From positions 62,001 to 126,000 of the forward strand of contig NIVC01000381.1 in NCBI GenBank assembly GCA_002269645.1: a DNA stretch of 64,000 nucleotides, read 5' to 3'. The notes under the pieces were generated by a model that made no database searches, was not told where the DNA came from, and worked only from the letters and a program-made list of their open reading frames with translations. This DNA is from Macrostomum lignano (lineage: Eukaryota). Positions 2,039 to 55,754 of the stretch are shown piece by piece. Numbering within the stretch: the first letter of the stretch is position 1; every line of letters begins with the position of its first letter. A program made the translations under genes and the position numbers.

Positions 2039-3860
2039 ATGGCCAGCTCAGAAATCGAAATCGATCCTAGCCAGGTGACGCCGGCCAACTCCGACGTGCA
2101 CAACATGTTCCTCCGAGCTCCTAAGCCCAAATCCTTCGTCATTGACGAGCAGCAGCATCCGGACTCAGTCTACGCTCGTGAAACTGTTGGCAGCGCGCTC
2201 GCCCTCGCATTATCCGAAGCGGCCGCCTGCCGTCCGGACGATCCGATCGAGTTCGTGGCCCAGCGTCTGATGAACTATCGTCGAACCGTCGATTATTGTC
2301 GAGAACGCGACGAAGAGATTGAAGAGATTCGCCAGGCGCGCATTGGCCAGCTGCAGGAGGAGGCGCGACAACGGGCCATAGCCGAGGAGCAACGGCTGCA
2401 ACGTGAGCGCGAAGAGCAGCGTCGTCGCGAGGAGCTGGAGCAGCTGCGCCAGTCTGTACCGGTTGAGACGCTCGCTCTGCCGTCGAAGCGAGGCGAGACG
2501 CGAAACAAAACCGGCGCGACGCCGTTGCACGCGGCGGTGCGATCCAGCTGCGATGTCGAGACTCTGCTGCGAATGCTGCACGATGGGCACAACTTCTGCG
2601 CTCGCGACGCACAGGTGAGGGCGTCGATGAATGCTGGATTGAGCTGGTGCGCTTTTTGTGGATGCTTTCACAACTCTATTTTCACCCAAGGTATTCTACA
2701 AATTGGGACTTCTGAAGTAGCAGAATTAACATTGAACAAGGTGAAATTCGGTCAACAAGAATTTTGAAGCATAGTTCCGCTATTTCCGCGATGTTTCTCA
2801 CATCTACCCAAAGTCGTTGGTGTATGAACACTTTTAGGTGCTTGTAACACCGACGTTTGGCCGACATTCGTCGGTTTCAGGGTGTTGCACGGCATCAGAA
2901 TGAAGTTTTGGGAGAGGGAAGTCGGTTGTGATTGGAGGGTTGTGGAGTTCTAGAAACGTAAAATGCCCTTTTCCTAACGAATGCATAGCCTACAGGGGCT
3001 GACAGTTCTGAAAATTAAACAGATCGAAAAGTGTCTAATGGAAAATCTCTAACATATTCCAGGGAATGAACGTTCGCGACGCAGCTCAAGCCACTAAAAA
3101 CGACGCCGTTGTCAAGGAGCTTGACAGTTTGGTGATCCGTTGGATGCGCGAAGAGAAAGTCGAACACCTCCGCTGGCTGCTGGCCAACGACTATGGGAGC
3201 AGTTTGCCAAGCCTGAAAAAGTCGTTCGGTCCCAAGCTCAAAGGTCTGCCGGAGGCCAGCAAGCTAATTGTGGACTCCGTGTCCAAGTGGGAGGCTCGCT
3301 ACAGGGAGCTGTGGAAGCTCAGCGCCAAAGGAACTCGAGAGCATCTGGAGCAGCACTGCAAGCAACAGCAAGATCAGCAGCAAATTGAAGATGTGTTCTC
3401 TCGCACTAGAGAGAGCCTCTCGGCGCTGCACATTGCCCTGCTTTGCAAAAACCAAGACACTGCTCGTTACCTAGCCAACGAGCACCCAGACCTGCTTCGA
3501 CTCGCTGACAGCTTTGGCCGCCTACCGCTGCACTATGCCTACGGAGCCGGCCAGAACTTTGTTGAAATTCTTCGCGAGGCGGCCGCCGCCAAGTCTGTCG
3601 AACAGAGCGACACCGCTCTCGATGCGTTCGGCTTCGCTCCGAGCGTCTACGCCAAGCGATACGAGCTGCTGCCGGAGCCGCCAAACTACGGCAGTCCCGA
3701 GCCGCTTCCCGGATCGACGGACGACGGAAACGGCGCCGAGAATGGCACTAGCGCCGATGGCACCCCAGACGCACGCGGTGAAGGGGAAGGCGGCGCGGAG
3801 GCTGGAGAAGTCAAGGACGAAAAATTGACTCCGATCAATGAGGACGAAGGTGAAGATTGA
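2039..3860 (+). CDS. Dpy-30 motif + coiled-coil + ankyrin-repeat protein, ~457 aa; join(2039..2614,3063..3860)
   Basis: VGSALALALSEAAACRPDDPIEFVAQRLMNY is a Dpy-30/DYDC-type dimerisation motif; E/R/Q-rich coil; ankyrin signatures GATPLHAAV, SALHIALL, FGRLPLHYAY. Phase-0 intron CAG|GTGAGG (2615) to TTCCAG (3062) joins the exons in frame. Confidence 0.85.
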
Positions 3861-4945: not shown

Positions 4946-5429
4946 AATATGGATCTGGCCTAACAAGCAGAACTAAATATTGAATTCTTAGTACAAACTG
5001 ACCTAGAAAAGCAAAGCAATAAATGCCAAACACACAAATTTAGTAATAGTGAGAAGTTAAAAAAAAACTTGTAGCCTACTGCCAGTAGTGCATATTGTAT
5101 GCATCCAATTTGCAAATGTAGAATTGGAAAAAGTTCGTCCTCATCAATATACAATTGTACGAGGCTATTATGTATAAATGAATGTACTTGTCGTCTCCGG
5201 TAAATCAATTGAATGGATTTACTACCAATGTTTAGGTAAAATTTCGGTAGTAACGATGTAGAGAAAAATAAGATAAACGATTGAATATTTTTTTTATACG
5301 CTCGTATCTCAAGTAATTTATACTCGGTAAAAACTAATGCATTAATACGAATCGATTAACGAGGCGCAAAACTATATATAAGGTATTAAATTATGGGATG
5401 GGGATTGAGTCCAGATTAGAAAAGGCAGG

Positions 5430-5720
5430 AGTGCGTGACTGAGGAAAGAGGCAATGCAGATTGAAGAGCCGATCAGAAAGCAGCGATTGGAGAGACAAGA
5501 ATAACAAGACTGAACTGGACAAACGGGAGAGAAAACAGAGTAAACAGAGGTAAGGGGGTTAGAATGCGCGACTGAGGAAAGAGGCCAGATTGAAGAACCA
5601 ATCAGAAGGCCACGAGGGAGAGAGATAAGAATAACAAGACTTTACTAGACAAAGAGGGGAGGGAGAGAGAGACAACAAGTCTGAACTGGAAAGTTGGAGA
5701 GAAAATAGAGTAAACAGAGG
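5430..5720. repeat. Imperfect local duplication (~140-bp purine-rich unit x2)
   Basis: GACTGAGGAAAGAGG..CAGATTGAAGA..ATCAGAA..AGAATAACAAGACT..GAGAGAAAA.AGAGTAAACAGAGG occurs twice. Confidence 0.75.
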
Positions 5721-5867
5721 GGAGTGCAGATGAACTAAAGAGATGCATTAAAAATTGCGACAAACGACAAGGTTTTAATACAAGTACGAGTACTCGGAGA
5801 AATGTCATATGCATGTACAATGTCACTCAGTAAAATTTTTACTTTATTGGATACGATCTCATTTCTG

Positions 5868-6956
5868 TCACTTGCCAGCGTCTGTTCTCATCGCGTCCCA
5901 AAGCTTGACGAGGTTGACGGAGTCTGGCGGCTCCCCCATGGTGAACAGGCTCACCGTGACCTGCACAGTCAGCGTGAAGCCGTAGCAATCCTGAACCTCC
6001 AGCTGATTTGGCTCCACATCAATTCTGTCAACTTTCCACTCAGACTCGTCCAGGATCTGCCAGCCGTCGCAGTCTGTCCAGTCAGGAAAGATGAGGAAGA
6101 ACCAGAAAGCTCCCCGCTCCGACTCGTCAAGGATGTCCACAACTCGCCTCGCTGTGGCTCTGAGCAGGATCTCTTAAAATGGGGGACTGAGCACCCAGCC
6201 GCCTGGATGCTGCATCAGGTCTATGTGAAAAAAGTCGCCCAGACTGCCGAATGCGCTGTCAGTGTCAGGGAACAGGCTGCAGAACTTTGCTCCTTGCCGA
6301 CCCAGCAGCTGACAATTGAGGGGCGAAGCGAAGCCCTCGTGAGCGGCTTTGCCCAGCTCGAACAGGGCATCGAAAGCTTTGGGGCAGAGGCTGGACTCTC
6401 CGCTCTTGAACATGTTCAGGCTGTGGTAGCGAAGGCACACCAGCGCGGCCCGCTGCTCACCACACAGCTTGACCAGCTGCTTGACTCGCTTGCTCCTAGG
6501 CGTCAGGAACTCCCCAAATGTGATGCGGCCTCGGCTGCCGGCCTCCTCGTATCGCAGCTTCGCGGTTTTCTTCACCTTAGCGATATTAATCTTTCTTCGT
6601 AGAAACTGATCGATCATGGACAGCAGCGACTCTACCAGACGCGTCGCTTCGTCGCTCGACATGTCGCTGAAGCTCCGGCAGAGCGATTTCACGAACTCAA
6701 CTTTGCTTCTGTTATCGCTCAACTTCTGTGGCAGCAGACGGAATGTCTCGGACATTTGCTGACCATCGGTGGTCTGCATGGTGATGAGCCAACGACCGAA
6801 TTGAATTTTCGTCCTTTTCTGCTGATTTCTATGCTCAGCTGGCTGAAACCGTTGAGTGCGTTTCTCGAGCCAACTCGCGAGTCGGTCTATTTCCCTAAAC
6901 TGGGAATACTCGAGCAGCAGTTTGACGTGAAGGCTGTTGTATTCTCCTTTTGCCAT
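5868..6956 (-). pseudogene. PCIF1-like: PCIF1/CAPAM-like adenine N6-methyltransferase, copy 1 (disrupted)
   Basis: Same 1089-nt span as copy 2. Catalytic NPPF reads SPPF and is immediately followed by GAA>TAA (6174-6176); the downstream ORF 5868..6140 is in the same frame. Confidence 0.85.
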
Positions 6957-7561
6957 CGTAAACTCTTACCGTCGCTTTCTCACCTTAGGTTCTCGCTTTA
7001 TGCTTTCAGTTTTTTCGCTTTTCGCTTTCCATTTTGTTTATTATTTGGCTTTGAGATTGGCCTTGCTTGGTCAGTGTCTAAAAAAGCCTATCGATAAACT
7101 GAAGTGTACGTTGCATGTATGTTAATTGAAACTCACCTTGCACTATACAAATGACCACTCAGCAATTCTTCAATTTTGCTGAGTATTGCAGTTGTACTTG
7201 CAGTTGCAGTACATTTAGAAAAGTTAGTGAGCTTACATGCTAATACCGCTCCGGTATATTTATTTTTATACTGTATGTACTTGGCTGGCTCGTAAGAAAA
7301 TTTGAAAAATAGATTAAAATTTGTCATAAATATGAAGTGCAGTCGACTGACTTAACTTTTGTCAGCATAAGAAAAAGCGCTCTAGCCTTGACCAGGCAAG
7401 GCCGGGCTCCAGCTTGTATATATAACGATAGGCGTTAGAGTTACGCTTATATACGCCAGCTAGGTTGAGGCATATATGTAGACGATAAGCAGCAATACTT
7501 TTGACTAGCAATACATGGACCAAACCACCAGAGTACGCGATGAGCGTTGAACGGAAAATTT

Positions 7562-7969
7562 ATGAAAGAAATAACCAATATGAACTGTATTAGGTTTTTC
7601 AATGCCGATGCTTTTAGTCCATAATGGACATCGTCAGGGCTCACTAAATTTATCAAACGAAGTAAGAAATTGTTCTTATATATTGTCTTGAGAAGTTGTA
7701 ACATTTGACAGAGCAGTAAAAATTAAGAAAAAAACTGGGTACAGTACAAGTTTGGATGGAAAGGCGTGCTACATATCAAATCAGTGTCCAGTCCGGTTTT
7801 TGAGCGAGCTAAAAAAATTTACGAAGTTGACGGCTAGCATCCCTTATGGCAAGCTGACTGCTCAGAGTAGGTTGTGGGGCCTTTTATGTACATAGCGATG
7901 TCCATTGTGGACGAAATGCATCGACATTGAAAAACCTAATACAGTTCATATTGGTTACTTCTCTTTCAT
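7562..7969. mobile_element. MITE-like element with ~72-bp terminal inverted repeats
   Basis: 7562-7633 (ATGAAAGAAATAACCAATATGAACTGTATTAGGTTTTTCAATG...) is the near-perfect reverse complement of 7895-7969; non-coding interior. Confidence 0.75.
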
Positions 7970-8299
7970 CTAGCTACTTACTTTTCATCAAGGAGCTACA
8001 TTACCCGAAAATTTAGTAGATTCTTAAGACTCTATTTACAGTAGAAATATATAAGCAAAATTCGCAAATAAGCAAATAAGCAAAAAGCCCAATAAGCACG
8101 GAGAAAAAATTATTCATGCAGATCCATTAAAAAAGCACATTTTTTAAAGAACAAATTCCTTCTTCAGTTTTATAAATCACCTTATTCTAGTAAAATTGTC
8201 ACGGACAAAGATGTTTGCTATGAATATTTTAAGTCTGAAAGTAACAAAAAGACAAAAAATAAAGCCTTCACAAAGATAACAAGCATTGCCACTAAATAG

Positions 8300-8435
8300 A
8301 AAACATCCCCAAGACAGCAAGCATCCCCCAGATAGCAAGCATCCCCCAGATAGTAAGCACCCCCAAATACAATAGCAAGCGCCCCCCTCCCCCAAATACA
8401 ATAACAAGCACCCCCAGATAGCAAGCAAAAGCAAG
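8300..8435. repeat. Short ~18-bp tandem repeat (AGCAAGCATCCCCCAGAT)
   Basis: Several imperfect adjacent copies. Confidence 0.7.
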
Positions 8436-8487
8436 CAAGATAGAAAGCGTATATATGCTTTCTAAATTTGAATATACTTTAAGCTAC

Positions 8488-8975
8488 ACTAGTGCAACTA
8501 TTTCCTTGGCTGATGCAATAATCACTTTCTCAGGTAGTGCAATAATCCATGTCTCAGCTAGTGCAATCGTTATTTTTTTCAGCCAGTGGAATATTTCTTT
8601 TCTCATCTAGTGCAATAATCTTTTTCTCATCAAGTGCAATAATCGTTTACTCATCAAGTGCAATACACCTTTCCTAATGGATTTTAATAATCACTTTCTA
8701 AGCTAGTGCAATAATCCTTTGATCATCTAGTGCAATAATCATTTACTCATCAATTGCAATAATCTTTTACTCATCAAGTGCAATAATCTTTTACTCATCA
8801 AGTTCAATAATCCTTTACGCAGCAAGTGCAATAATCTATGCCTCATCTAGTGCAATAATCGTTTTCTCATCTAGTGCAATAATTAATGTCTCAGGAAGTT
8901 CAATAATTAATCCTTTACTCATTAAGTGGAATAATCCTTCACTCATCAAGTGCGAAAACCGTTTTCTTATCTAGT
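8488..8975. repeat. Degenerate 24-bp minisatellite (GTGCAATAATCTTTTACTCATCAA)
   Basis: Direct tandem periodicity. Confidence 0.85.
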
Positions 8976-9827
8976 CTGAACTAGAAATTATAGATGCAAA
9001 ATTAAATTTTTGTCGAATCGAAAACTCAATTCTTGAATTTTAAAATTGGGAAGGAGGATAGAATTGAATACGCTGCATTTCTCTTCTTCGGCGCGAAAAA
9101 CGTACGTTGTACACGTAGATCGCTGCGCGTAAAACACGCGTACGTAAAATACATAATTTTGTCACTTTTTAAATGATTAACACACGCACATGTAAGCAAA
9201 ATACATGTACAGGTACACGCGTTTGACGCAATTATTATACACACGTTAAACACCTCGCTTTACGCAAGTTTTACTTATTGTTTTCCATGTATTAAATGTA
9301 CAGGTAGCGCCAGGTACATGTACCTATTTTAAAGTGGCGTCCTGTACGAGCTTTATAGAATCCAACAAACAAATATCTGATTTAAATCCTCCAAAATTTC
9401 TAGAGTTCAGAATTTAGGAATATGGAATTTAGTTGTTTTGCCAAAAGACTTAAAAGTCACAATGTCGCAACAGAAATAGCAATGACATTCCGCTTGGTGA
9501 ATTTGAATGCAAAACCGGTTTCTAAAATAGTAATGCCGGTATCCGCGGTGTTTTAATTGGAAAAATCGAGTACATTCAAATCATAAATAAAAATTACAGA
9601 GCAATGCAGCATTGGGGGACCATCGGAAAAGCGAGAAAAAAGAAAATTGTATTATGGAAATTGTACTATGGACATGTGCTATTTTATATTAATTGTACTT
9701 TTATGTATTATGGCTCAGAATCTGCACTGCGCCTTATGCAATCCGGACTGACAACGAAATGGCTGGATAGTGGCATGCAGTAACAAAGTGCTGAAAACAG
9801 CACAGACGCTTCATCGTTTGCCGCCGG

Positions 9828-10380
9828 TTACAGTGCAGTACAATACGACGGATGTATGCGGGCTACGTCATCAGGCGCGTCAGCGAATACTCCATCAGGC
9901 GGTTCCGACGATCGTAAGGCTTTAATTGCAGTAACTGCACCAAAGTCAGACTCGTTTTCTAATAGCGTCTTGACTGCGGAAAAGATACACTGTAGTTGAC
10001 AAGCCTTAACGCCGACGGTACCTGCACGCCAAACACCGAGTGACAAATTAATCTGCAATTAATCCTTTTCACAGTTCTCGTATATCCTTCACGAATAACT
10101 TCACTGAAATAACGCCTGAAAATAGATGGCATATCAAAAACGATTGACATTAGCACTTTGATTTCATAGAAATCAATTAAACAGGCAAAGGCAAAACCAT
10201 AGCATACAGTATAAGCCGAGAACAATCGTACACGTCTTCTCAAAACAGTATTGGACAGATTGAAATCAAACCCGATCAATGCAGGATTCTGCTCATCCAC
10301 TGCATCTTTTTGGGCTGTAGCTGTAGCTGTAGCAAAACTTTCATCACTGCTCTGCTCGCTATAAATTCTTCGTCTGCCAT
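9828..10380 (-). pseudogene. Possible intronless orphan ORF split by two frameshifts (~180 aa)
   Basis: ATG at 10380 (MADEE...), then frame of 9959..10300 (YSEQSSDESFATATATAQKDAVDEQNPALIG...), then frame of 9828..10058 (QINLSLGVWRAG...CTAL*). No family recognised. Confidence 0.3.
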
Positions 10381-10579
10381 ATCTAAGTTTGTTTAATGAA
10401 AACTGTCATTTCTATGGTCTAAGGCTTGCAAACTATGGAAAGATTAATAGCGCGACCAAATTCTCTAATTGGTTGCTCTATAGACCATTTTTGGGCCATA
10501 GACAATCAAAAGCAAGTCTTAAATAGCTTTATTTCCCCCTAAGGATTAAATTGCTCGCTAAAACGGTGCTATAGAAATG

Positions 10580-11468
10580 ACAGTAGTATTAAAACGCTAC
10601 TATTAAAACGTTAATATTAAAATGACAGTATAGTATTAAAACGCTACTATTAAAGCGCTGCTATTAATTAAACGCTACTATTAAATAGCTACTATTAAAA
10701 CGCTACTATTAAAATACTACTATTAAAATGATAGTATTAAAACGCTACTATTAAAACGCTACTAATAAAACGCTGCTATTAAAACACTACTAATAAAACA
10801 CTAATATTAAAATGATAGTATTAAAACGCTACTATTAAAACGCTGCTATTAAAACGCTACTATTAAAACGCTACTATTAAAACGCTACTATATTAAAACG
10901 CTAATATTAAAATGACAGTAGTATTAAAAAACTACTAATAAAACACTAATAAAACACTGATATTAAAATGATAGTATTAAAACGCTACTATTAAAACGCT
11001 GCTATTAAAACGCTACTATTAAAACGCTACTATTAAAACGCTACTATATTAAAACGCTAATATTAAAATGACAGTAGTATTAAAAAACTACTAATAAAAC
11101 GCTGCTATTAAAACACTACTAATAAAACACTGATATTAAAATGATAGTATTAAAACGCTACTATTAAAACGCTGCTATTAAAACGCTACTATATTAAAAC
11201 GCTAATATTAAAATGACAGTAGTATTAAAAAACTACTAATAAAACGCTGCTATTAAAACACTACTAATAAAACACTGATATTAAAATGATAGTATTAAAA
11301 CGCTACTATTAAAACGCTGCTATTAAAACGCTACTATATTAAAACGCTAATATTAAAATGACAGTAGTATTAAAAAACTACTAATAAAACGCTACTATTA
11401 AAACGGTACTATTAAAACGCCAATATTAAAATGACAGTATATAGTATTAAAACGCTACTATTAAAACG
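10580..11468. repeat. 14-bp AT-rich minisatellite (ATTAAAACGCTACT / ATTAAAATGATAGT) with ~145-bp higher-order repeat
   Basis: Tandem monomers; the same order of variants recurs near 11090, 11230 and 11375. Confidence 0.9.
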
Positions 11469-12140
11469 ACATGATTCGTTTTCTTCAATTGATTTCTCCG
11501 GCTGATTACTCCAGGCATTTACCCAAAGGCTATCATTGGTTTGTCTATGTGCATAGGTAGAATCCATCACGACTTAGATGCGTGATCAAAGTCATGTAAT
11601 CTATGGTCTATAGGCTAGGGAAATCCATTTGAGCCATGGAAATCCCAGGCCAGTCCTAGTAAGTGCTTGGGGTAGCTAAATGCTTTATGGCTGGAGTAAA
11701 TGTGTACGATGTTTTTGTACAAATAAGACGAATTTACATGCATAACGAGCGCATAAAACCATAAATACGAGCGTACTAGAAGAATAAAGCATTTGAAATA
11801 TATTATAGAAAGAAAAACTGGAAAACGGATGAAAACCAAAAATAGACGACGACGACGTATAGCTGTTTTGAAATTCGGCAAAAAAAGTTGGTCAGAATCA
11901 ACAAAAATACGTAAAAAGGGCGGTCACGGTTGCCCTGAAAACAACCGTAACGGATTGCAAAAAAACGTCAGTTTGTTAATAGTCTGCATCAACATCGCGG
12001 AGGAGCCGGGGGAGCGGAGGTTGAACACCTCATTCAAACCACAAACGACTAGGTTTAGATGCCGTGCTCAAAGAATTTCATATGCATGTACAATGTCACT
12101 CAGTAAAATTTATTTTTTATTGGAGGGGATTTCGTTTCCG

Positions 12141-13229
12141 TCACTCTTCAGCGTCTGTTCTCATCGCGTCCCAAAGCTTGGCGAGGTTGATGGAGTCTGG
12201 CGGCTTCCCCATGGTGAACAGGCTCACCGTGACCTGCACAGTCAGCGTGAAGCCGTAGCAATCCTGAACCTCCAGCTGATTTGGCTTCACATCAATTCTA
12301 TCAACTTTCCACTCGGACTCGTCCAGGATCTGCCAGCCGTCGCAGTCTCTCCAGTCAGGAAAGATGAGGAAGAACCAGAAAGCTCCCCGCTCCGACTCGT
12401 CAAGGATGTCCACAACTCGCCTCGCTGTGGCTTTGAGCAGGATCTCTTCAAATGGGGGGTTAAGCACCCAGCCGCCTGGATTCTGCATCAGGTCTATGCG
12501 AAAAAAGTCGCCCAGACTGCCGAATACGCTTTCAGTGTCAGGGAACAGGCTGCAGAACTTTGCTCCTTGCCGACCCAGCAGCTGACAGTTGAGCGGCGAA
12601 GCGAAGCCCTCGTGAGCGGCTTTGCCCAGCTCGAACAGGGCATCGAAAGCTTTGGGGCAGAGGCTGGACTCGCCGCCTCTGAACATACTCAGGCTGTAGT
12701 AGCGAAGGCAAACCAGCGCGGCCCGCTGCTCACCGCACTGCTCGACCAGCTGCTTGACTCGCTTGCTCAAAGGCGTCCAGAATTCCCCAAATGTGATGCG
12801 GCCTCGGCTGCCGGCCTCCTCGTATCGCAGCTTCGCGGTTTTCTTCACCTTAGCGATATTAATCTTTCTTCGTAGAAACTGATCGATCATGGACAGCAGC
12901 GACTCTACCAGACGCGTCGCTTCGTCGCTCGACATGTCGCTGAAGCTCAGGCAGAGCGATTTCACGAACTCAACTTTGCTTCTGTTATCGCTCAACTTCT
13001 GTGGTAGCAGACGGAATGTCTCGGACATTTGCTGACCATCGGTGGTCTGCATGGTGATGAGCCAACGACCGAATTGAATTTTCGTCCTTTTCTGCTGATT
13101 TCTATGCTCAGCTGGCTGAAACCGTTGAGTGCGTTTCTCGAGCCAACTCGCGAGTCGGTCTATTTCCCTAAACTGGGAATACTCGAGCAGCAGTTTGACG
13201 TGAAGGCTGTCGTATTCTCCTTTTGCCAT
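12141..13229 (-). CDS. PCIF1-like: PCIF1/CAPAM-like adenine N6-methyltransferase, copy 2 (intact, 362 aa, no WW domain, intronless)
   Basis: Ordered motifs CLRY, EGFASPLNC, FCSLFPDTE..FGSLGDFF, NPPF and FLIFPDW match the PCIF1 catalytic domain (human ECFASPLNC, YCSAFPDTDGYFGSRG, ANPPF, FIVFIPEW, recalled from memory). Confidence 0.85.
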   Translation of the reverse strand: MAKGEYDSLHVKLLLEYSQFREIDRLASWLEKRTQRFQPAEHRNQQKRTKIQFGRWLITMQTTDGQQMSETFRLLPQKLSDNRSKVEFVKSLCLSFSDMSSDEATRLVESLLSMIDQFLRRKINIAKVKKTAKLRYEEAGSRGRITFGEFWTPLSKRVKQLVEQCGEQRAALVCLRYYSLSMFRGGESSLCPKAFDALFELGKAAHEGFASPLNCQLLGRQGAKFCSLFPDTESVFGSLGDFFRIDLMQNPGGWVLNPPFEEILLKATARRVVDILDESERGAFWFFLIFPDWRDCDGWQILDESEWKVDRIDVKPNQLEVQDCYGFTLTVQVTVSLFTMGKPPDSINLAKLWDAMRTDAEE

Positions 13230-13339
13230 CGTAAACTCTTACCGTCGCTTTCTCACCTTAGGTTCTCGTTTCATGCTTTCAGTTTTTTCGCTTTTCGCTT
13301 TCCATTTTGTTTATTTTTGCTTTGAGATCTTTTACACGA

Positions 13340-14045
13340 CCCAGCTTTACACGGAAGATGAAGCTGACCTGGTTGCTACGCAAAGTTCTTAATCCACCTC
13401 ACAAAATCTCAGATGCCTCACTAAGTTGTTTTTTCATACGAGTACTGCTGCTGGTAGAATTTGCTTTTCAAAAACGTGCGGCTGTTGCCCAACATCCCTG
13501 CAGTATTTCTCCCTATCCTTAATGCCTTCACTTCCAAGCCTCAAACTCAGGCTGTACTTGCTGTACAGCCAAGCTCACTCTTGCCAGTGTACTCAGAGAA
13601 AACGTACGCCAGTATATTTACGCTCGTACTGCCTCTGCTCTGCCTGTCGCGAAATTCTGTTATTTTGCCCTTAGAATAATTCACTCGATCGCCCTCAGGT
13701 TTGCCTAGCCTTGTTTAATTTTCCTCTCTCTCTTCTGTTTGTACATTGTTAGCGTTTTCTCTCTTCCACTATTTATCGATCGGCTAGCCCCCCCCCCCAA
13801 TTTGGTTTCTTATCTATTCCACCCCTCCCTTTATTATTCTCGACTCAACCCCCCTGCGTTAGTTTTATAAATAATATACGCTGCATGAAGGGCTGGCTCT
13901 CAAGCCTGGTCTTTTCCTTTTTTCTATGCAGTTCAAAATCAGCAGTAATTCAATCGTTAGTTTTCTACAACGCTCCCTTTTTTACTGCCTACGACACTAC
14001 GAGCTATATATTTACTGCCTCCCCCGTGGCATAGCCCTTCCTCCC
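13340..14045 (+). repeat. Dispersed repeat, copy B (homologous to 1601-1872, with internal insertion)
   Basis: See copy A; replaces the 5' flank that copies 1 and 3 of the PCIF1-like gene share. Confidence 0.85.
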
Positions 14046-14179
14046 GAACTAAATCCCCGGGCTTTTGCCGCAATTTTATTATACAAACTTTAGACACACA
14101 CTTTACGCAAATTTTACACTATCGTTTTCTATGTAATGAATGTACATGTAGCGCTAAGTACATGTACCGGAAGTACGAG

Positions 14180-14775
14180 ATTTGCTAGCAGGAAATCTGC
14201 TAGCCGAAATCTGCCAGCCGAAATCTGCTAGCTGAAGTCTGCTAGCCGCGAAGATTGCTTGTTTTCAGGCAAAGGTAATTTTGAAACCCCTTTCAAACAT
14301 CTGGCCAGATAAGGGAGGGAGAGAGGCGGAGGTTGGGGAGGCTGTCTCGCTGAAAAAAGCAGAATAACTTTAAAAGTGCACAGCGCCGTTCAGGATTAAC
14401 TTTAAAACTCGAAATTTTACACGAGCGTGTCAAAATAGTTAAAAAAATTTTTGTTTAATTTAAAGAGGATTCGTAAAAGTGGAGCGACGCTATAAAGAAT
14501 TTAGTAAAAAATCACGCTTTTAGCCGTTTTTTGCACTTTTAGGTAGGAAGACTTAGATTTAGGAAATTTTATTTAGGGTAGCCTAAGACATTCTCTGTAG
14601 TGAGTTTAGGGTGAGTGCAAAAGTTGGTTTAATTTGGTTGAGTGATTTGGGATCATAGCCATGCTTGGGCGCAACCTTGGGAATCACTCGGCCGTTTCTA
14701 TTGGCAACACACACATGTATGTCGCTATTGGACAGAATAGTAGTCACGATTCATAGCGAACAAATTTGTACACAG

Positions 14776-14807
<32 letters not shown>

Positions 14808-16035
14808 AGAGTTTTCATTTTTATAGTTACATATTTGCGTCCCTGCTAATCAACACGACAAAAGGAGAGTCAATAAAGAGCGATTAAGCGCAAATCGAAT
14901 CGTCCTGTTCAGTTTCTCGCGAAATCGGACAAGCAAATTTGTCTCTGACGACTTAAAACTTCGTGAGTTCGGCTGAATCCTTGTTAGCAAAATTCCTGCT
15001 GGCAAGCTTCGCGGCTAGCAGACTTCAGCTCGCAGACTTCAGCTAGCAGACTTCAGCTAGCAGACTTCAGCTTGCAGACTTCAGCTAGCAGACTTCGGCT
15101 TGCAGACTTCAGCTAGCAGACTTCAGCTAGCAGACTTCAGCTAGCAGACTTCAGCTAGCAGACTTCAGCTAGCAGACTTCAGCTAGCAGACTTCAGCTAG
15201 CAGACTTCAGCTAGCAGACTTCAGCTAGCAGACTTCAGCTAGCAGACTTCAGCTAGCAGACTTCGGCTTGCAGACTTCAGCTAGCAGACTTCAGCTAGCA
15301 GACTTCGGCTTGCAGACTTCAGCTAGCAGACTTCGGCTTGCAGACTTCAGCTAGCAGACTTCAGCTTGCAGACTTCAGCTAGCAGACTTCAGCTAGCAGA
15401 CTTCAGCTTGCAGACTTCAGCTAGCAGACTTCGGCTTGCAGACTTCAGCTAGCAGACTTCAGCTAGCAGACTTCAGCTAGCAGACTTCAGCTAGCAGACT
15501 TCAGCTAGCAGACTTCAGCTAGCAGACTTCAGCTAGCAGACTTCGGCTTGCAGACTTCAGCTAGCAGACTTCAGCTAGCAGACTTCAGCTAGCAGACTTC
15601 AGCTAGCAGACTTCGGCTTGCAGACTTCAGCTAGCAGACTTCGGCTTGCAGACTTCAGCTAGCAGACTTCAGCTAGCAGACTTCAGCTAGCAGACTTCAG
15701 CTAGCAGACTTCGGCTTGCAGACTTCAGCTAGCAGACTTCAGCTAGCAGACTTCAGCTAGCAGACTTCAGCTAGCAGACTTCAGCTAGCAAACTTCGGCT
15801 TGCAGACTTCAGCTAGCAGACTTCAGCTAGCAGACTTCAGCTAGCAGACTTCAGCTAGCAGACTTCGGCTTGCAGACTTCAGCTAGCAGACTTCGGCTTG
15901 CAGACTTCAGCTAGCAGACTTCAGCTAGCAGACTTCAGCTAGCAGACTTCAGCTAGCAGACTTCGGCTTGCAGACTTCAGCTAGCAGACTTCAGCTAGCA
16001 GACTTCGGCTTGCAGACTTCAGCTAGCAGATTTCA
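14180..16035. mobile_element. Foldback/MITE-like element with inverted arms built from a 14-bp unit
   Basis: Reverse complement of 14183-14258 (GCAATCTTCGCGGCTAGCAGACTTCAGCTAGCAG...) matches 15002 onward (GCAAGCTTCGCGGCTAGCAGACTTCAGCT...). Confidence 0.6.
15015..16030. repeat. 14-bp minisatellite (AGCTAGCAGACTTC, variant GGCTTGCAGACTTC), ~70 copies
   Basis: Highly homogeneous tandem array. Confidence 0.95.
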
Positions 16036-16710
16036 TAGACCCACATGTGGGTGCCTACACACATGCAACAATTAAATGTCTAACTTAAATCCTCCAAAAT
16101 TCTAGAGAGTTCAGAATTTAGTAATCGGGAATTTAGGGACCGGGCACTGCAACATCTGCAATCCGGACTGATAACGAGACACACTGGATAGTACATATGA
16201 AAAGTCTTGCTTTTCCAACACGTCTATCCGATCAGAATCTGCAACTTGAATTTTCGAACCGAGCAATTTTGAAACCGTTTAATGAATTTAAATGGCTTGA
16301 AATGAAAATCCCGATGGTATGGGGTGTTTGTACATATAAGACGAGTATACATGCGTAACGTAAAACCATAATTACCAGCAAAAGAAAGCCTTTAAAACAT
16401 TATAAAAAGAAAAAGAAAGAAAACTGATTAAACAAAAAATAGACGACGTACATGTATAGCTGTTTTGAAATTCAGCAAAATACAGATGGCCAGAATCAAC
16501 AAAAGCTTGTGGCAACAGCCTGCATCAACATCGCGGAGGATGCCACGGAGGAGCGGAGGTTGAACACCTCATTCAAACCACAAACGACAAGGTTTTGATA
16601 CAGTGCTCGGAGAAATTTCATATACATGTAAAATTTCACTCAGTAAACTTTAGTCTTTCTTGGATAGGATCCCATTTCCGTTACTCTCCAGCGTCTGTCC
16701 TCATCGCGTT

Positions 16711-17769
16711 TCAAAGCTTGGCGAGGTTGACGGAGTCTGGCGGCTTCCCCATGGTAAACAGGCTCACCGTGACCTGCACAGTCAGCGTGGAGCCGAAGCA
16801 GTCCTGAACCTCCAGCTGATTTGGCTTCACATCAATTCTATCAACTTTCCACTCGGACTCGTCCAGGATCTGCCAGCCGTCGCAGTCTGTCCAGTACGGA
16901 AAGATGAGGAAGAACCAGAAAGCTCCCCGCTCCGACTCGTCAAGGATGTCCACAACTCGCCTCGCTGTGGCTTTGAGCAGGATCTCTTCAAATGGGGGGT
17001 TGAGCACCCAGCCGCCTGGATGCTGCATCAGGTCTATGTGAAAAAAGTCGCCCAGACTGCCGAATGCGCTGTCAGTGTCAGGGAACAGGCTGCAGAATTT
17101 TGCTCCTTGCCGACCCAGCAGCTGACAATTGAGGGGCGAAGCGAAGCCCTCGTGAGCGGCTTTGCCCAGCTCGAACAGGGCATCGAAAGCTTTGGGGCAG
17201 AGGCTGGACTCGCCGCCTCTGAACATGTTCAGGCTGTGGTAGCGAAGGCAAACCAGCGCGGCCCGCTGCTCACCGCACAGCTCGACCAGCTGCTTGACTC
17301 GCTTGCTCCTAGGCGTCCGGAACTCCCCAAATGTGATGCGGCCTCGGCTGCCGGCCTCCTCGTATCGCAGCTTCGCGGTTTTCTTCACCTTAGCGATATT
17401 AATCTTTCTTCGTAGAAACTGATCGATCATGGACAGCAGCGACTCTACCAGATGCGTCGCTTCGTCGCTCGACATGTCGCTGAAGCTCAGGCAGAGCGAT
17501 TTCACAAACTCAACTTTGCTTCTGTTGTCGTTCAAATTCTGTGGCAGCAGACGGAATGTCTCTGACATTTGCTGACCATCGGTGGTCTGCATGGTGATGA
17601 GCCAACGACCGAATTGAATTTTCGTCCTTTTCTGCTGATTTCTATGCTCAGCTGGCTGAAACCGTTGAGTGCTCTTCTTGAGCCAACTCGCGAGTCGGTC
17701 TATTTCCCTAAACTGGGAATACTCGAGCAGCAGTTTGACGTGAAGGCTGTCGGATTCTTCTTTTGCCAT
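16711..17769 (-). CDS. PCIF1-like: PCIF1/CAPAM-like adenine N6-methyltransferase, copy 3 (352 aa; last 10 residues lost by TGG>TGA)
   Basis: NPPF intact; about 21 substitutions versus copy 2 over 352 aa by manual count; the frame continues after the TGA as NAMRTDAGE*, matching DAMRTDAEE* of copy 2. Confidence 0.8.
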   Translation of the reverse strand: MAKEESDSLHVKLLLEYSQFREIDRLASWLKKSTQRFQPAEHRNQQKRTKIQFGRWLITMQTTDGQQMSETFRLLPQNLNDNRSKVEFVKSLCLSFSDMSSDEATHLVESLLSMIDQFLRRKINIAKVKKTAKLRYEEAGSRGRITFGEFRTPRSKRVKQLVELCGEQRAALVCLRYHSLNMFRGGESSLCPKAFDALFELGKAAHEGFASPLNCQLLGRQGAKFCSLFPDTDSAFGSLGDFFHIDLMQHPGGWVLNPPFEEILLKATARRVVDILDESERGAFWFFLIFPYWTDCDGWQILDESEWKVDRIDVKPNQLEVQDCFGSTLTVQVTVSLFTMGKPPDSVNLAKL

Positions 17770-18859
17770 CGTAAACTCTTACCGTCGCTTTCTCACCTTA
17801 GGTTCTCGTTTCATGCTTTCAGTTTTTTCGCGTTTCGATTTCCATTTCGTTACTTTTTTGCTTTGAGATTGGCCTTGGTTTTTTCAGTGTCCGAAAAGGC
17901 TAATCGATAACTGAAGTGTACGTTGCAATGTATTATTAATTGAAACCCGCCTGCACTATACAATATTGTGCATGTATAAAGATCGAAATGACCACTCACC
18001 AAATCTTATATTTTGTTGAGTATTGCAGTTGTACTTGCAGTTGCAGCTAGTAGAAAAGTTAGTAATCTCACATGTAATATATACCGCTCCAGTATATTTA
18101 TATTGCGTGTATATGTACTTGGCTGGACTGAAACAAAATAACGTATATAAAATCTAAAAAATCGATAAATTTGTCATGAATACGCTCGTATGAAGTGCCG
18201 CCAACGACTTAACTTTTGTCAGACTAAGAAAAAGCGCTCTAGATCTTGACCAGGCAAAGCCGGGTTGCAGCTTATATTCTAAGCAGCTTAAGGTAACTAA
18301 AGAATTCTTATGGAACGATCTAGGCGTTAGGTTTAAAGGGATACGCCAGGTTGGAGCCTACATATATACATGTAATTGATAAGCAGCAATGCTTTGGCTA
18401 CTACAAGTAGCAATAACGAAACCTACTAGTACTCGATGAACGGAGAACGGAAAATCTAGTTGGTTTTCTAGACTCTAACTTATAGATATAAGAAAAATAC
18501 GCAAAAATATGTCAAATACATGTACAAAAAATATAATATAACGCGTTGTAATCTTATTGATCACTACATAACAATTTTTTAACGAAACGACCTAAACCAG
18601 ATTCACAGTTAAGCCGCTAGATTGTGTCCAGATAGACTTGTAAAGTCGATTTTCGAACAACATAGTACAGATCAGTCATCATATAATTGCTTCTTGTAAT
18701 TAATTCAAAATGATTTAATCTAAACCTCGATCCATCTCTGTAATTTTTTTTCGAAAAAGCATATGCCTCCTAAAATTTTCCCAGCGACGTAGCTTCTTCG
18801 TCCTTGTACAATTGCTGAGTCTTGAGTAGTGAAAGCGCCCCGTTATCCGAGGATGCGGG

Positions 18860-24082: not shown

Positions 24083-27000
24083 ATGTCGCACTGGGACCTG
24101 ACTGTTCACATTAGTCGAGCTCTGCAAAACAGCAGCGCTCTCTCTTATTCTCTTCTATTGGCTGCTTCTGTTGTTGGCGCATGGATTTTGTTTCAACGTC
24201 GCGGCCGTCAAGGTCACGTGATTAGCGCGTCGTCTGTCAAGGTAATCTTAATTAAAGAAGACAAAAAAAGTATTCTCACTTTTCTACTTTTAGTAGCATA
24301 ACATAAATTTTGTTGTCGTTTTTTCATCCAAACAGAAAGCGGTACTTTCAAGTAGTAGTCAAATGTCGTTGAGGAGTCCAACAACTCGCAAGGCAATGCT
24401 GCCTACTACAAGTTGCACAAGTACAGCTAATGGAAGCGTTGACGAGACCTTTAATAAAGTGCGCGTGTTCTACGCTAGCCAACTGGGCAGAGCTAAACAT
24501 TTTGCCACTCTGCTTCGAGACGAACTGGCTGGTGTGTTGAAACAACAGAAGCAGCAGCAGCAGCAGTCTCAGTGTTGCAACGGTGGCGACGGTGAGGCGT
24601 GCAAATCTACTACTGTTAGTAGTAGCGATTCTGCTGGCATTGAATTGATTGATTTGGCTAATTATGATCCAGAGGAGAGTCTGCATAAAGAGGTGGGTTT
24701 TTATTTATTTCTTTATAAGAAATATCTTCAGTGTTGAATAAGTCAGATTGAAGTATTTATCAAATCGAATATTAACATGTTAATCCAATATAAAAATCGG
24801 TTAATCCAATATCAAAATCCGTTAATCCAGTATCAAAATCCGATAATCCGATATCGAAATCCGATAATCCAATATCAAACTCCGATAATCCATTATCAAA
24901 ATCCGATAATCCAATATCAAAATCCGATGATCCAATATCGAAATCCGGTAATCCAATATCAAAATCCGGTAATCCAATATCAAAATCGGTTAATCCAATA
25001 TCAAAATCCGTTAATCCAGTATCAAAATCCGATAATCCGATATCGAAATCCGATAATCCAATATCAAACTCCGATAATCCAATATCAAAATCCGGTAATC
25101 CAATATCAAAATCCGGTAATCCAATATCAGAATCCGGTAATCCAATATCAAAATCCGGTAATCCAATATCAAAATCCGATAATCCAATATCAAAATCCGG
25201 TAATCCAATATCAAAATCCAATATCAAAATCCGTTAATCCGATATCGAAAACCGATAATCCATTATCAAAATCCGGTAATCCAATATCAAAATCCGATGA
25301 TCCAATATTGAAATCCGGTAATCCATTATCAAAATCCTGTAATCCAATATCAAAATCCGATAATCCAATATCAAAATCCGGTAATCCAATATCAAAATCC
25401 GATAATCCAATATCAAAATCCGATAATCCAATATCAAAATCCGGTAATCCAATATCAAAATCCGATAATCCAGTATCAAAATCCGGTAATCCAATATCAA
25501 AATCCGATGATCCAATATTGAAATCCGGTAATCCATTATCAAAATCCGGTAATCCAATATCAGATTCCGGTAATCCAATATCAAAATCCGTTAATCCAGT
25601 ATCAAAATCCGATAATCCGATATCGAAATCCGATAATCCAATATCAAAATCTGATAATCCAATATCAAAATCCGATAATCCAATATCAAAATCTGATAAT
25701 CCAATATCAAAATCCGGTAATCCAATATCAAAATCCGATAATCCAATATCAAAATCCGGTAATCCAATATCAAAATCCGATAATCCAATATCAAAATCCG
25801 ATAATCCAATATCAAAATCCGGTAATCCAATATCAAAATCCGATAATCCAATATCAAAATCCGATAATCCAATATCAAAATCCGATAATCAACTATAAAA
25901 AATTGGTAATCCATTATCGAAATGCACTTCTCATTCAATTTAACCCCCTGACCGTTCCCAGTCTCCCGACACCCTCTGCTACTTTCTGTTGCCAACCTAC
26001 GAAGGCGGCTCGTCTCCAAATACCGGCGCCTGGTTCTGCAAATGGCTGGCCGAAGCGGCCGAAGATTGGCGCGTTGAAAGGGGCCACCTAAGCGGATTGA
26101 GGTTCATTGTCATCGGCCTGGGCAACTCGCTCTACGCTGAGAATTACAATTTGGTGAGGCTTTTTTATTTTTCTTCTTCCCCTTCACTTTCTTTCTGTCG
26201 CTCTCCCTCCCTCCCGGCCTCCCCTCTCCATTCCCCTCTCTCGCTCTCCCTTCCTTCTCCATTCCCCTCTCTCGCTCTCCCTCCCTCCCTTCTCCATTCC
26301 CCTCTCTCGCTCTCCCTCCCTCCCCTCTCCATTCCCCTCTCTCGCTCTCCCTCCCTCCCCTCTCCATTCCCCTCTCTCGCTCTCCCTCCCTCCCCTCTAG
26401 CCCCCTTGCGTCTCTCTCTCTCTCTCTGTCCCTCTTACCCCTCTTCCTTCTCCCTTCCCCTCTCTCTCTCTCTCTCTCTTTCACCCCCTCTCCCACCCTT
26501 TTTCCGTTTCCTTCCCCTCTCTCTCACCCTCTTCCCCTCCCCCTCCCCCCCTCTCCTTTCCCTCTCTCGCCCTCTCCTCTCTCCCGCCCATCCGCCTCCC
26601 TCTCTCTCACCCCCTTTCTTTCTTTCTCTCCCTCTCTCTCGCCTTCTCTCTCTTCCCCTTTCTCGCTCTCTCCCCCTTGCTCCCTTCTCTCCGTTTTTTC
26701 TGCCTCCCCTCTCCACCTTTTCCCTTTCCTGTCTCTCTGATCAATTTTTCCATCTCCGAATGCTTGGCCTCCACCACAGCGAGCCTCCTTTGTTTCCTTC
26801 GAAAAACTGTCAGATAGCCAAGCGTGTTGACGAGCAGCTGACTCAGCTGTCCGGTACCCGTCTGCGGCCGCCAGTTCTGCTAGACGAAAATGTCGCCTCA
26901 GCAACCGGCCACGGCGGTCAAGAGGCCGACTTTCAGGCCGCGCTTCAATCTCAACTGTTGGATCCTTTGGTTAGTAAGAAGAAAAAATCAGCTTGCTGTT

Positions 27001-55235: not shown

Positions 55236-55754
55236 TTCCTCAGAAACTACCGGTCGATTAGATAGATTATATATCAGACGTTAGCCACCATTTATCAACA
55301 TGCAAGACTAACGCCAAAAAGGCTCCGCTCCTTCTGCCTCATGGTCCCCACTGACTGAGTCGGATCCCGTCTTGAACTAAACAAAAAAGCCTATTTCAAA
55401 AACAATTATATCCGATCTTACTACATACTCAAACGACCAGATGAAACTGCAGCTGAAAACAGAACTGCTTACCACATAGGAGAGTTGTGAGTAGTTAGCT
55501 AGACTAGAATGTGAGCTTCTGAGTCTAAGCAAGCAGTTCAGTTTTTATGTTTTTATTGGTGCGCGCTGAGCATAAAAGTCATATTCTCCACTTTTACTTG
55601 AGGCGCACAAATGCCAAACTATTTTGGGTAGGGAATTACTTTTCTATAAGAAGTTGGCCAAGGAAAGACGGAGAAAATATGAAAATGCGTATATAAGACG
55701 GACAATGGAAGAGAGATAAGCACAAGGAAGGCATTACGGAGGGATCAGGAAGGG

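What the first reader, a model, noticed from the sequence alone, without database searches (positions are those of the whole stretch)
5760..18460. Cluster of three intronless, WW-less, divergent PCIF1/CAPAM-like m6A methyltransferase genes in birth-and-death evolution
Seen: three ~94%-identical minus-strand copies with the N6-adenine MTase motif NPPF. Copy 2 is intact, copy 3 lacks its last 10 aa, and copy 1 has NPPF>SPPF plus an adjacent stop. Established: metazoan PCIF1 is normally a single ~700-aa gene with an N-terminal WW domain that binds phospho-CTD of Pol II and methylates cap-adjacent Am. These proteins are half that size, lack WW, have an unrelated-looking N-terminus, carry a short insert (QLLGRQGAK) between FASPLNC and FCSLFPDT, and have no introns while every host gene here is spliced. 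Inference: a horizontally acquired (viral or protist-like) or retroposed, Pol II-uncoupled adenine methyltransferase family now amplifying. Its substrate may differ (spliced-leader or snRNA caps, other RNA, or DNA).
Basis: partly seen in the sequence, partly recalled or inferred. Interest (0 to 1): 0.8.

Follow-up and report, generated by a model that had tools for sequence, protein, structure and literature searches.

The report
Tandem viral-type PCIF1-like methyltransferase genes
A Macrostomum-type flatworm genome carries three tandem, intronless copies (one intact, one slightly shortened, one dead) of a short RNA-cap-type adenine methyltransferase whose closest relatives outside Macrostomum are giant-virus proteins rather than the normal animal PCIF1 enzyme. 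This is a tidy gene-family story, not a new kind of system.

Summary
Three collinear minus-strand copies of a 363-codon gene (96% identical in the coding sequence) encode a PCIF1/CAPAM-family methyltransferase domain with no WW domain. Copy 2 is intact, copy 3 has one premature stop near its end, and copy 1 has one in-frame stop plus a catalytic-motif substitution.

- The genes are not canonical animal PCIF1. They belong to a deep, separate "short" clade shared with giant-virus (Nucleocytoviricota) proteins, scoring 94-136 bits against those and 40-47 bits against fish and annelid WW-PCIF1.
- They are not a fresh acquisition. M. lignano has at least six paralog lineages, two of them with spliceosomal introns, and the window genes nest inside that animal clade. 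Codon composition matches the host genes.
- The "odd" N-terminus and the 5-residue insert are features of the whole clade, viral members included.
- Amplification was by DNA-level tandem duplication of gene plus spacer, probably with gene conversion. There is no poly(A) tail, and homology extends into the flanks, so retroposition is unlikely.
- Constraint is relaxed: dN/dS is 0.4-0.5 among the copies and 0.65-0.84 against Mlig030305.

The most likely function, by inference, is SAM-dependent N6-methylation of cap-adjacent adenosine without WW-mediated Pol II coupling. Whether Macrostomum also has a canonical WW-PCIF1 could not be determined.

The parts
12141..13229 (-). Copy 2: intact intronless 362-codon PCIF1-like gene, ATG to stop
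   Evidence: ORF. PF12237 at E 4.9e-28. It keeps every column that is invariant or near-invariant across 35 family members, including the NPPF motif. AF2 model has pLDDT 89 and pTM 0.88. The only PDB matches below E 1e-3 are CAPAM/PCIF1.
16681..17769 (-). Copy 3: same gene with one premature stop near the 3' end. The catalytic motif is intact and the ORF is 352 aa.
   Evidence: PF12237 at E 1e-28.
5868..6956 (-). Copy 1: pseudogene-like copy with one in-frame stop and one substitution in the catalytic tetrapeptide. No frameshift.
   Evidence: Only the truncated PF12237 match survives in the first ORF.
5760..7419 (-). Duplicated unit around copy 1: gene, about 110 nt downstream and about 460 nt upstream shared with copy 3
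   Evidence: blastn 5760-7419 against 16580-18277, 89.5% over 1713 columns. AATAAA lies about 20 nt after the stop and no poly(A) tract is present.
11978..13328 (-). Duplicated unit around copy 2: gene, about 100 nt upstream and about 160 nt downstream shared with copy 3
   Evidence: blastn 11978-13328 against 16514-17869 at 94.7%, and 12074-13328 against 5801-7057 at 95.6%.
16514..18277 (-). Duplicated unit around copy 3
7420..11977 (.). Spacer between copies 1 and 2. It is AT-rich and holds a 14-nt minisatellite at 10587-11468. It carries blocks collinear with the next spacer.
   Evidence: Blocks 9219-9324, 9360-9432 and 11711-11851 match 14061-14168, 16063-16136 and 16324-16448 in the same order at 74-84%. 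Tandem repeats.
13329..16513 (.). Spacer between copies 2 and 3, holding a 14/28-nt minisatellite at 15014-16035

Best explanation
The three genes are young tandem duplicates inside a Macrostomum-lineage expansion of short, WW-less PCIF1-like methyltransferases. This family forms a deep clade, separate from canonical animal and protist PCIF1, that is otherwise populated mainly by giant-virus (Nucleocytoviricota) proteins and a few unidentified eukaryotes.

The family has been resident in the flatworm genome for a long time. Some paralogs carry spliceosomal introns, and codon composition is host-like. An exchange with giant viruses is therefore ancient if it happened, and its direction is unresolved.

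The local cluster arose by DNA-level tandem duplication of a 4.5-6.3 kb gene-plus-spacer unit in minisatellite-rich DNA. The gene units have probably been kept similar by gene conversion while the spacers diverged. One copy is now dead, one is slightly shortened and one is intact, under relaxed constraint.

Inferred mechanism, not shown: the intact protein folds as a helical domain packed on a Rossmann methyltransferase domain, as in CAPAM. It binds SAM and N6-methylates an adenosine, most probably the 2'-O-methylated cap-adjacent adenosine of RNA. Lacking a WW domain, it would not be recruited through the phosphorylated Pol II CTD.
For: - Family and fold. PF12237 at 98-100 bits. PDB PCIF1 at E 1e-11. 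High-confidence AF2 model whose only PDB hits below E 1e-3 are CAPAM 6irv/6irw/6irx/6iry/6is0, with TMq 0.52-0.60. All invariant family columns are kept in copy 2.
- Clade. The exhaustive phmmer search found 2102 relatives, and the lowest-scoring of the 150 listed (about 75 bits) still outscores human PCIF1 at 47 bits. A bit-score table separates two clades. NJ bootstrap is 74% for that split, 70% for Macrostomum plus unknown eukaryotes, and 94% for the window/Mlig030305/Mlig015920 group.
- Viral relatives. Gene-dense contigs of 50-453 kb rich in ORFans carry EsV_1_7_cys, Herpes_ori_bp, dNK and glycosyltransferase domains. One hit is a 147-kb IMG/VR contig. Some relatives are fused to FtsJ, poxvirus-type poly(A) polymerase or Rpb1. 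BFVD structural hits include Bodo saltans virus, CroV, Pithovirus, Tetraselmis virus, Hokovirus and salmon gill poxvirus.
- Long residence. There are at least six M. lignano lineages. Mlig008908 has 3 exons and Mlig021227 about 5. GC3 is 0.68, against 0.61-0.69 for host ORFs.
- Tandem DNA duplication. Spacers are collinear and flank homology is extended, with no poly(A) tail. Tandem arrays also occur at two other M. lignano loci.
- Gene conversion. Gene units are 95-96% identical but spacer blocks only 74-84%. Shared-derived sites conflict, at 7, 4 and 7 for the three possible pairings.
- Constraint. dN/dS is 0.38-0.50 among the copies (p 0.003-0.04) and 0.65-0.84 against Mlig030305 (p 0.07-0.3).
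Against: - No expression evidence exists for the window copies. The exact protein is absent from the 153-billion-gene index.
- dN/dS against Mlig030305 cannot be distinguished from neutrality, and two of the three copies are damaged, so the sub-lineage may be decaying.
- The trees are NJ on Kimura distances with moderate support. The window sub-lineage sits on a long branch.
- The taxonomic origin of the four unknown-eukaryote sequences could not be established.
- Sequence profiles align with canonical PCIF1 only over aa 171-318. Equivalence of the N-terminal helical half to the CAPAM cap-binding helical domain therefore rests on the predicted fold alone.
- Substrate and activity are untested.
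Confidence: 0.7

Rival explanations
1. The window sub-lineage is a non-functional, decaying gene family. The copies persist only because they are young and are homogenised by gene conversion, and none makes an active enzyme.
For: One copy is dead and one truncated. dN/dS is 0.65-0.84 against Mlig030305 and not significantly below 1. The nearest deeper paralog, Mlig015920, has GPPF in place of NPPF. There is no expression evidence for the window copies.
Against: Copy 2 keeps 362 uninterrupted codons and every invariant family residue. dN/dS among the copies is below 1, with p 0.003-0.04. The M. lignano relative is intact and carries an annotated gene model. No frameshift occurs in any copy across 1089 nt.
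Confidence: 0.2
2. The copies are processed retrogenes of a spliced parent such as Mlig008908 or Mlig021227, and are being amplified by the LINE machinery.
For: They are intronless while two older paralogs have introns whose first junctions may coincide. The conserved unit is roughly mRNA-sized. A LINE with endonuclease, RT and RNase H lies in the same window.
Against: No poly(A) tract follows the AATAAA in any copy or in L001. Homology between copies 1 and 3 runs about 460 bp upstream of the ATG, and between copies 2 and 3 about 160 bp downstream. The spacers are collinear, so the duplicated unit was gene plus spacer. An ancient retroposition that founded the intronless sub-lineage is not excluded.
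Confidence: 0.1
3. The cluster is a recent integration of giant-virus DNA (an endogenous viral fragment), acquired independently of the other Macrostomum paralogs.
For: The closest relatives with known context outside Macrostomum are on giant-virus-like contigs. The genes are intronless.
Against: The window genes group with Mlig015920 and the other Macrostomum paralogs rather than with any viral sequence. They score 167-259 bits against those paralogs and 94-136 bits against viral-type proteins. GC3 is host-like. No other viral-type gene was recognised among the neighbouring ORFs tested, which are Dpy-30/ankyrin, flavodoxin-like and PI3K.
Confidence: 0.05
4. These are ordinary flatworm PCIF1 orthologues whose WW exon lies upstream and was missed.
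For: Pfam names the domain PCIF1_WW. Whether Macrostomum has a separate canonical PCIF1 could not be determined.
Against: An in-frame stop lies four codons upstream of the ATG in all copies. No WW-like motif occurs in any frame of the first 30 kb. Pfam finds no WW domain. Profile similarity to WW-PCIF1 is confined to aa 171-318, and bit scores are three times lower than to viral-type proteins. The M. lignano gene model is a single 1086-bp exon.
Confidence: 0.03

Closest known systems
PCIF1/CAPAM (human and zebrafish cap-specific adenosine N6-methyltransferase; PDB 6irv, 6irw, 6irx, 6is0)
   Same: It shares the Pfam PF12237 methyltransferase core, the NPPF catalytic motif and the FASPLN and FGSxG motifs. 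The predicted helical-plus-Rossmann fold has CAPAM as its only significant PDB match.
   Different: There is no WW domain and the protein is half the length. A 5-residue insertion follows the FASPLNC motif. Sequence-profile homology is limited to about 150 residues. Bit scores are only 40-47. The genes are intronless, tandemly duplicated and under relaxed constraint.
Short PCIF1-like proteins of Nucleocytoviricota (annotated in Bodo saltans virus, Cafeteria roenbergensis virus, Pithovirus LCPAC, Tetraselmis virus 1, Hokovirus and salmon gill poxvirus; also metagenomic giant-virus contigs)
   Same: The roughly 320-380-aa architecture is the same, without a WW domain. The profile matches full length over positions about 15-340. 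The 5-residue insert is shared. Structural matches have TM up to 0.65-0.71. Bit scores are higher than to cellular PCIF1.
   Different: The window genes sit in an animal genome among host genes and minisatellites, have host-like codon usage, and form a clade with other Macrostomum paralogs, some of which have introns. No fusion to FtsJ, poly(A) polymerase or Rpb1 is present, unlike some viral members.
Trypanosome PCIF1 homologue, cited in PMC8868631 (ref. 25, Pandey et al. 2020) for m6Am and m6,6Am in cap structures
   Same: It is a PCIF1-family enzyme reported to act on the cap-adjacent adenosine of a spliced-leader-derived cap. By my own recollection (not checked with the tools here), Macrostomum also trans-splices mRNAs, which makes spliced-leader caps a conceivable substrate.
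   Different: No sequence comparison with the trypanosome protein was made here. The protist PCIF1s that were sampled fall in the canonical clade, not the short clade. The link is only an analogy.

Membership tests
PCIF1/CAPAM methyltransferase family (Pfam PF12237) | Domain match above the curated gathering score | tested here: met
   98.3, 100.5 and 62.1 bits for copies 2, 3 and 1, against a cut-off of 31.1.
PCIF1/CAPAM methyltransferase family (Pfam PF12237) | NPPF catalytic tetrapeptide and the conserved SAM/substrate motifs | tested here: met
   Copies 2 and 3 keep NPPF and all invariant or near-invariant columns of a 35-sequence family alignment. Copy 1 does not keep the tetrapeptide.
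PCIF1/CAPAM methyltransferase family (Pfam PF12237) | CAPAM-like fold: Rossmann methyltransferase domain plus helical domain | tested here: met
   AF2 pLDDT 89 and pTM 0.88. Foldseek E 6e-14 to 5e-12 against 6irv/6irw/6irx/6is0/6iry, with the next hit at E 5e-3. Correspondence of the helical half is structural only, because hhalign covers aa 171-318.
PCIF1/CAPAM methyltransferase family (Pfam PF12237) | m7G-cap binding pocket residues and m6Am-forming activity | not tested
   No residue-level structural alignment or activity data were available from these tools.
Canonical metazoan PCIF1 (WW-PCIF1 orthologue) | N-terminal WW domain (PF00397) | tested here: not met
   No WW hit at E<=1. No WW-like motif in six frames of 1-30000. 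An in-frame stop lies upstream of the ATG.
Canonical metazoan PCIF1 (WW-PCIF1 orthologue) | Groups with animal PCIF1 in similarity and trees | tested here: not met
   40-47 bits against fish and Owenia PCIF1, while those score 480-790 bits with each other. The clade is separate in the NJ tree with 74% bootstrap.
Short, giant-virus-type PCIF1-like clade | Full-length (about 340 aa) profile match, shared 5-residue insert after FASPLN, and higher similarity to viral-type than to cellular PCIF1 | tested here: met
Short, giant-virus-type PCIF1-like clade | Encoded in a viral genome context | tested here: not met
   The window context is host-like (Dpy-30/ankyrin, flavodoxin-like, PI3K, LINE, minisatellites) and GC3 is host-like. 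The genes are cellular members of the clade.
Processed retrogene | Intronless copy of a spliced parent | tested here: inconclusive
   The window genes are intronless. Paralogs Mlig008908 and Mlig021227 have introns, but parentage is not established.
Processed retrogene | Poly(A) tail, with homology ending at the transcript ends | tested here: not met
   No A-tract follows the AATAAA. Homology continues about 460 bp upstream and about 160 bp downstream, and the spacers are collinear.

The most novel reading that the evidence does not exclude
A free-living flatworm lineage domesticated a giant-virus-type cap-adjacent adenosine N6-methyltransferase that works independently of the Pol II CTD, and then expanded it into a rapidly evolving multigene family. 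Its members could mark a special RNA class, for example spliced-leader-derived or germline transcripts, or could act in self/non-self RNA discrimination against viruses that carry the same enzyme. If Macrostomum has also lost canonical WW-PCIF1, this would be a replacement of the animal m6Am writer by a viral-type one.
Probability: 0.15. Interest if true: 0.7.

Novelty: new member of a known kind. Interest (0 to 1): 0.42.

Why it matters
PCIF1 is the only known writer of cap-adjacent m6Am in animals and is normally a single gene coupled to Pol II. Here an animal carries many copies of the other deep branch of the family, the branch otherwise seen in giant viruses that cap their own mRNAs in the cytoplasm. 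This gives a concrete, sequence-defined case for asking whether virus-type cap-modifying enzymes have been exchanged with animals, and whether WW-less PCIF1-like enzymes act on different RNAs. Macrostomum lignano, whose genome carries the same family, is a tractable organism for expression studies. As it stands, the result is a gene-family and distribution finding, not a new mechanism.

Tried and rejected
- Literature. No paper in the held library mentions PCIF1 together with Macrostomum. None mentions any of the five M. lignano locus tags or the SRA run of the nearest unknown-eukaryote homologue. The flatworm and giant-virus searches brought up nothing specific: the flatworm listing held no paper containing PCIF1, and the one giant-virus paper that contains it only cites the 2003 PCIF1 paper in its reference list.
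- Exact look-up of the copy-2 protein in the gene index found nothing. The source assembly and species of the window therefore remain unidentified beyond "Macrostomum-like".
- A search for a canonical WW-PCIF1 in Macrostomum, using a canonical profile, returned fish, annelid, spider and protist proteins but no Macrostomum entry. That search scores only 8000 word-sharing candidates and visibly misses most animals, so its silence is not evidence of absence.
- The IMG/VR scan gave only one confirmed locus.
- hhalign did not extend homology into the N-terminal half.
- The long antisense ORFs over every copy (251-360 aa) were considered as a possible overlapping gene and rejected. They lie in the codon-aligned antisense frame and follow from the near-absence of TTA, CTA and TCA codons, which make up 1-2 of 363.
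- Synteny between the window and the M. lignano Mlig030305 locus was sought. Only the roughly 1.26-kb gene unit aligns well, at 90-92%. One 68% flank block also aligns, but it overlaps a dispersed repeat found in L011 as well.
- UniParc identifiers of two homologues (P0005, P0043) could not be resolved to organisms.

Full report
**1. What is there**

Listing ORFs over 4-20 kb shows three minus-strand reading frames with nearly the same protein.
- Copy 2 (12141-13229) is intact at 362 aa.
- Copy 3 gives a 352-aa ORF within a homologous stretch at 16681-17769.
- Copy 1 gives a 260-aa ORF, and its frame continues after one stop, within a homologous stretch at 5868-6956.

Taken as they stand, the three 1089-nt stretches are collinear without a single indel and are 96.1-96.3% identical. 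Copies 1 and 3 each contain one internal stop and copy 2 none. Copy 1 also carries a substitution in the catalytic tetrapeptide.

**2. Family**

Pfam PF12237 is named PCIF1_WW but models the methyltransferase domain. It is hit at 98-100 bits against a cut-off of 31.1, and no WW domain appears even at E<=1. Against the PDB, the only sequence hits are human and zebrafish PCIF1/CAPAM (E about 1e-11, residues 185-296).

An AlphaFold2 model built on a 35-sequence alignment is confident, with pLDDT 89 and pTM 0.88. It shows an N-terminal helical half followed by an alpha/beta methyltransferase half. Foldseek finds CAPAM structures as the only PDB matches below E 1e-3 (E 6e-14 to 5e-12, TMq 0.52-0.60), and the next hit is at 5e-3. 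Copy 2 keeps every invariant and near-invariant column of the family alignment, NPPF included.

**3. Organism and paralogs**

The best database hit is Macrostomum lignano BOX15_Mlig030305g1, at 361 aa and 86% identity. Its called gene is 1086 bp, so it too is intronless.

M. lignano holds further lineages:
- Mlig015920, 372 aa and 40% identical, with GPPF instead of NPPF.
- Mlig008908, 392 aa.
- Mlig021227, 440 aa.
- Mlig000263, 1283 aa.
- A0A1I8J898.

The 1283-aa model is a merger of three tandem units of about 430 aa, spaced about 2.6 kb apart. The Mlig015920 locus holds two tandem copies 6.7 kb apart. Tandem arrays are therefore a habit of this family. Mlig008908 has three exons and Mlig021227 about five, and their first junctions may coincide.

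The exact copy-2 protein is not in the gene index. The window comes from M. lignano or a close relative, but I could not say which.

**4. Where the family sits**

An exhaustive phmmer search against 1.84 billion representatives gave 2102 hits at E<=1e-3. The 150 listed score 75-698 bits, whereas human PCIF1 scores 47.

Several of the nearest non-Macrostomum hits lie on long, gene-dense contigs rich in ORFans, with giant-virus signatures:
- a 453-kb contig with EsV_1_7_cys, collagen and a DEAD helicase;
- contigs with Herpes_ori_bp-type helicase, dNK and glycosyltransferases;
- a 147-kb IMG/VR contig.

Other hits are fused to FtsJ 2'-O-methyltransferase, poxvirus-type poly(A) polymerase, an Rpb1 fragment or GT8. 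BFVD structural matches name Bodo saltans virus, Cafeteria roenbergensis virus, Pithoviruses, Tetraselmis virus 1, Hokovirus and salmon gill poxvirus.

I fetched canonical comparators from the tools: WW-containing PCIF1 from fishes and the annelid Owenia, plus protist PCIF1s. Copy 2 scores as follows:

| Comparison set | Bits |
|---|---|
| Macrostomum paralogs | 167-698 |
| Four unidentified eukaryote-like sequences | 124-159 |
| Viral-context or viral-fusion proteins | 94-136 |
| WW-PCIF1 | 40-47 |
| Most protist PCIF1 (one sampled sequence gave no hit) | 38-57 |

The canonical set scores 100-800 bits within itself.

NJ trees on profile-aligned columns separate the two clades with 74% bootstrap. 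Inside the short clade, the six Macrostomum sequences join the four unidentified eukaryote sequences at 70%, and the window, Mlig030305 and Mlig015920 group at 94%. These are distance trees with moderate support. The direction of any virus-host transfer is open.

**5. The "odd" features are features of the clade**

A profile of the short clade matches viral and environmental members over positions about 15-340, which is nearly full length. It matches canonical PCIF1 only over about 179-312. The insert (LLGxxGxxFCS) is present in viral-context members too. Profile-profile comparison with canonical PCIF1 gives 99.7% probability, but only for aa 171-318. The N-terminal half is therefore conserved within the clade. 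It resembles the CAPAM helical domain only at the level of the predicted fold.

**6. How the cluster arose**

- The AATAAA signal lies about 20 nt after the stop. No A-tract follows it in any copy or in the M. lignano locus.
- Copies 1 and 3 share about 460 bp upstream, and copies 2 and 3 share about 160 bp downstream.
- The two spacers carry three further blocks in the same order at 74-84% identity. The duplicated unit was therefore gene plus spacer, with a period of 4.5-6.3 kb.
- The spacers have since been remodelled by different minisatellites.
- The gene units are 95-96% identical, synonymous sites included (dS 0.06-0.07), while the spacer blocks are much more diverged.
- Derived sites shared by pairs of copies conflict, at 7, 4 and 7.

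The last two points suggest gene conversion. This qualifies a pure birth-and-death picture. The same contrast holds for the M. lignano locus, where the unit is 90-92% identical and the only alignable flank 68%.

**7. Selection and composition**

| Comparison | Nei-Gojobori dN/dS | Binomial p against neutrality |
|---|---|---|
| Among the three copies | 0.38-0.50 | 0.003-0.04 |
| Against Mlig030305 | 0.65-0.84 | 0.07-0.3 |

Constraint is weak at best. GC3 of copy 2 is 0.68, equal to host ORFs in the window at 0.61-0.69. There is no compositional trace of a recent foreign origin.

**8. WW exon**

An in-frame stop lies four codons upstream of the ATG. A six-frame scan of the first 30 kb finds no WW-like motif. 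Its other refuting condition, no expression and dN/dS about 1, remains partly open.

**9. Function (inferred)**

Three lines of evidence bear on this: the fold, the intact motifs, and the clade's fusion partners (a 2'-O-methyltransferase that would make the Am substrate, a poly(A) polymerase and an RNA polymerase subunit). The best-supported function for the clade is N6-methylation of cap-adjacent adenosine on mRNA-type transcripts without WW/CTD coupling. For the window sub-lineage specifically, relaxed constraint and two damaged copies leave a real chance, about 0.2, that it is decaying.

**10. Verdict**

This is a real and correctly described gene cluster. It adds new members to a known family, in an unusual taxonomic place and with an interesting viral-type affinity. 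It is not a recent acquisition and not a new kind of system.

No step needed referral.

Noticed in passing
window 5802-6602, 11793-12875, 16660-17415 (+ strand); also L001 10352-11170: Long antisense ORFs (251-360 aa) overlie every copy of the gene. They lie in the codon-aligned antisense frame and are explained by the near-absence of TTA, CTA and TCA sense codons (1-2 of 363) at GC3 of about 0.68. They are a by-product, not a second gene.
   Followed up: yes
window 60652-63984 (- strand), running off the window end: A non-LTR retrotransposon (LINE) with an Exo_endo_phos endonuclease, RVT_1 reverse transcriptase and RNase H domains. The coding region is split over at least three ORFs, so there are at least two interruptions. 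It was not analysed further.
   Followed up: partly
window 28810-35938: A 7.1-kb array of a 33-bp unit (about 217 copies, 97% matches). The window as a whole is unusually rich in minisatellites, with about 25 arrays of period 14-145 nt, including some inside apparent coding ORFs. One example is the 'antifreeze beta-roll' Pfam hit at 24777-25898, which is a translated 21-bp repeat.
   Followed up: partly
window 55739-58154: A strongly strand-asymmetric purine-rich (GA) repeat array of about 20/36/56-nt units, with GC skew +0.60 and AT skew +0.65.
   Followed up: no
window 5221-5550; L001 11193-11504; L011 7520-7631: A short dispersed repeat lies just downstream of copy 1. It is also next to the M. 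lignano Mlig030305 gene (68% identity) and about 400 bp upstream of Mlig008908 (79%). It could be a common MITE/SINE-like element or a remnant of shared ancestry of the loci.
   Followed up: no
window 13333-13592 and 1594-1836: An 83%-identical segment of about 250 bp lies immediately upstream of copy 2 and recurs near the Dpy-30/ankyrin gene. It replaces the upstream sequence that copies 1 and 3 share.
   Followed up: no
L002 6001-12499 (M. lignano NIVC01002568.1): The annotated 1283-aa protein Mlig000263 is a merged gene model of three near-identical tandem PCIF1-like units rather than a genuine three-domain protein. The same locus tag occurs on three contigs (g2, g4, g6).
   Followed up: partly
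P0036 / L010 (M. lignano Mlig015920), two tandem copies at 1280-2395 and 8001-9116: This intact, intronless paralog has GPPF in place of the catalytic NPPF. Two environmental canonical-type proteins (P0020, P0024) have GPPY. Catalytically altered PCIF1-like proteins seem to recur.
   Followed up: no
window 2039-3860 (+), 25989-27512 (+), 39325-45050 (+): Host-type genes flank the cluster: a Dpy-30 motif/ankyrin protein, a flavodoxin-domain protein and a class-I-like PI3K (ras-binding and kinase domains). Each is split over several ORFs, consistent with introns.
   Followed up: partly
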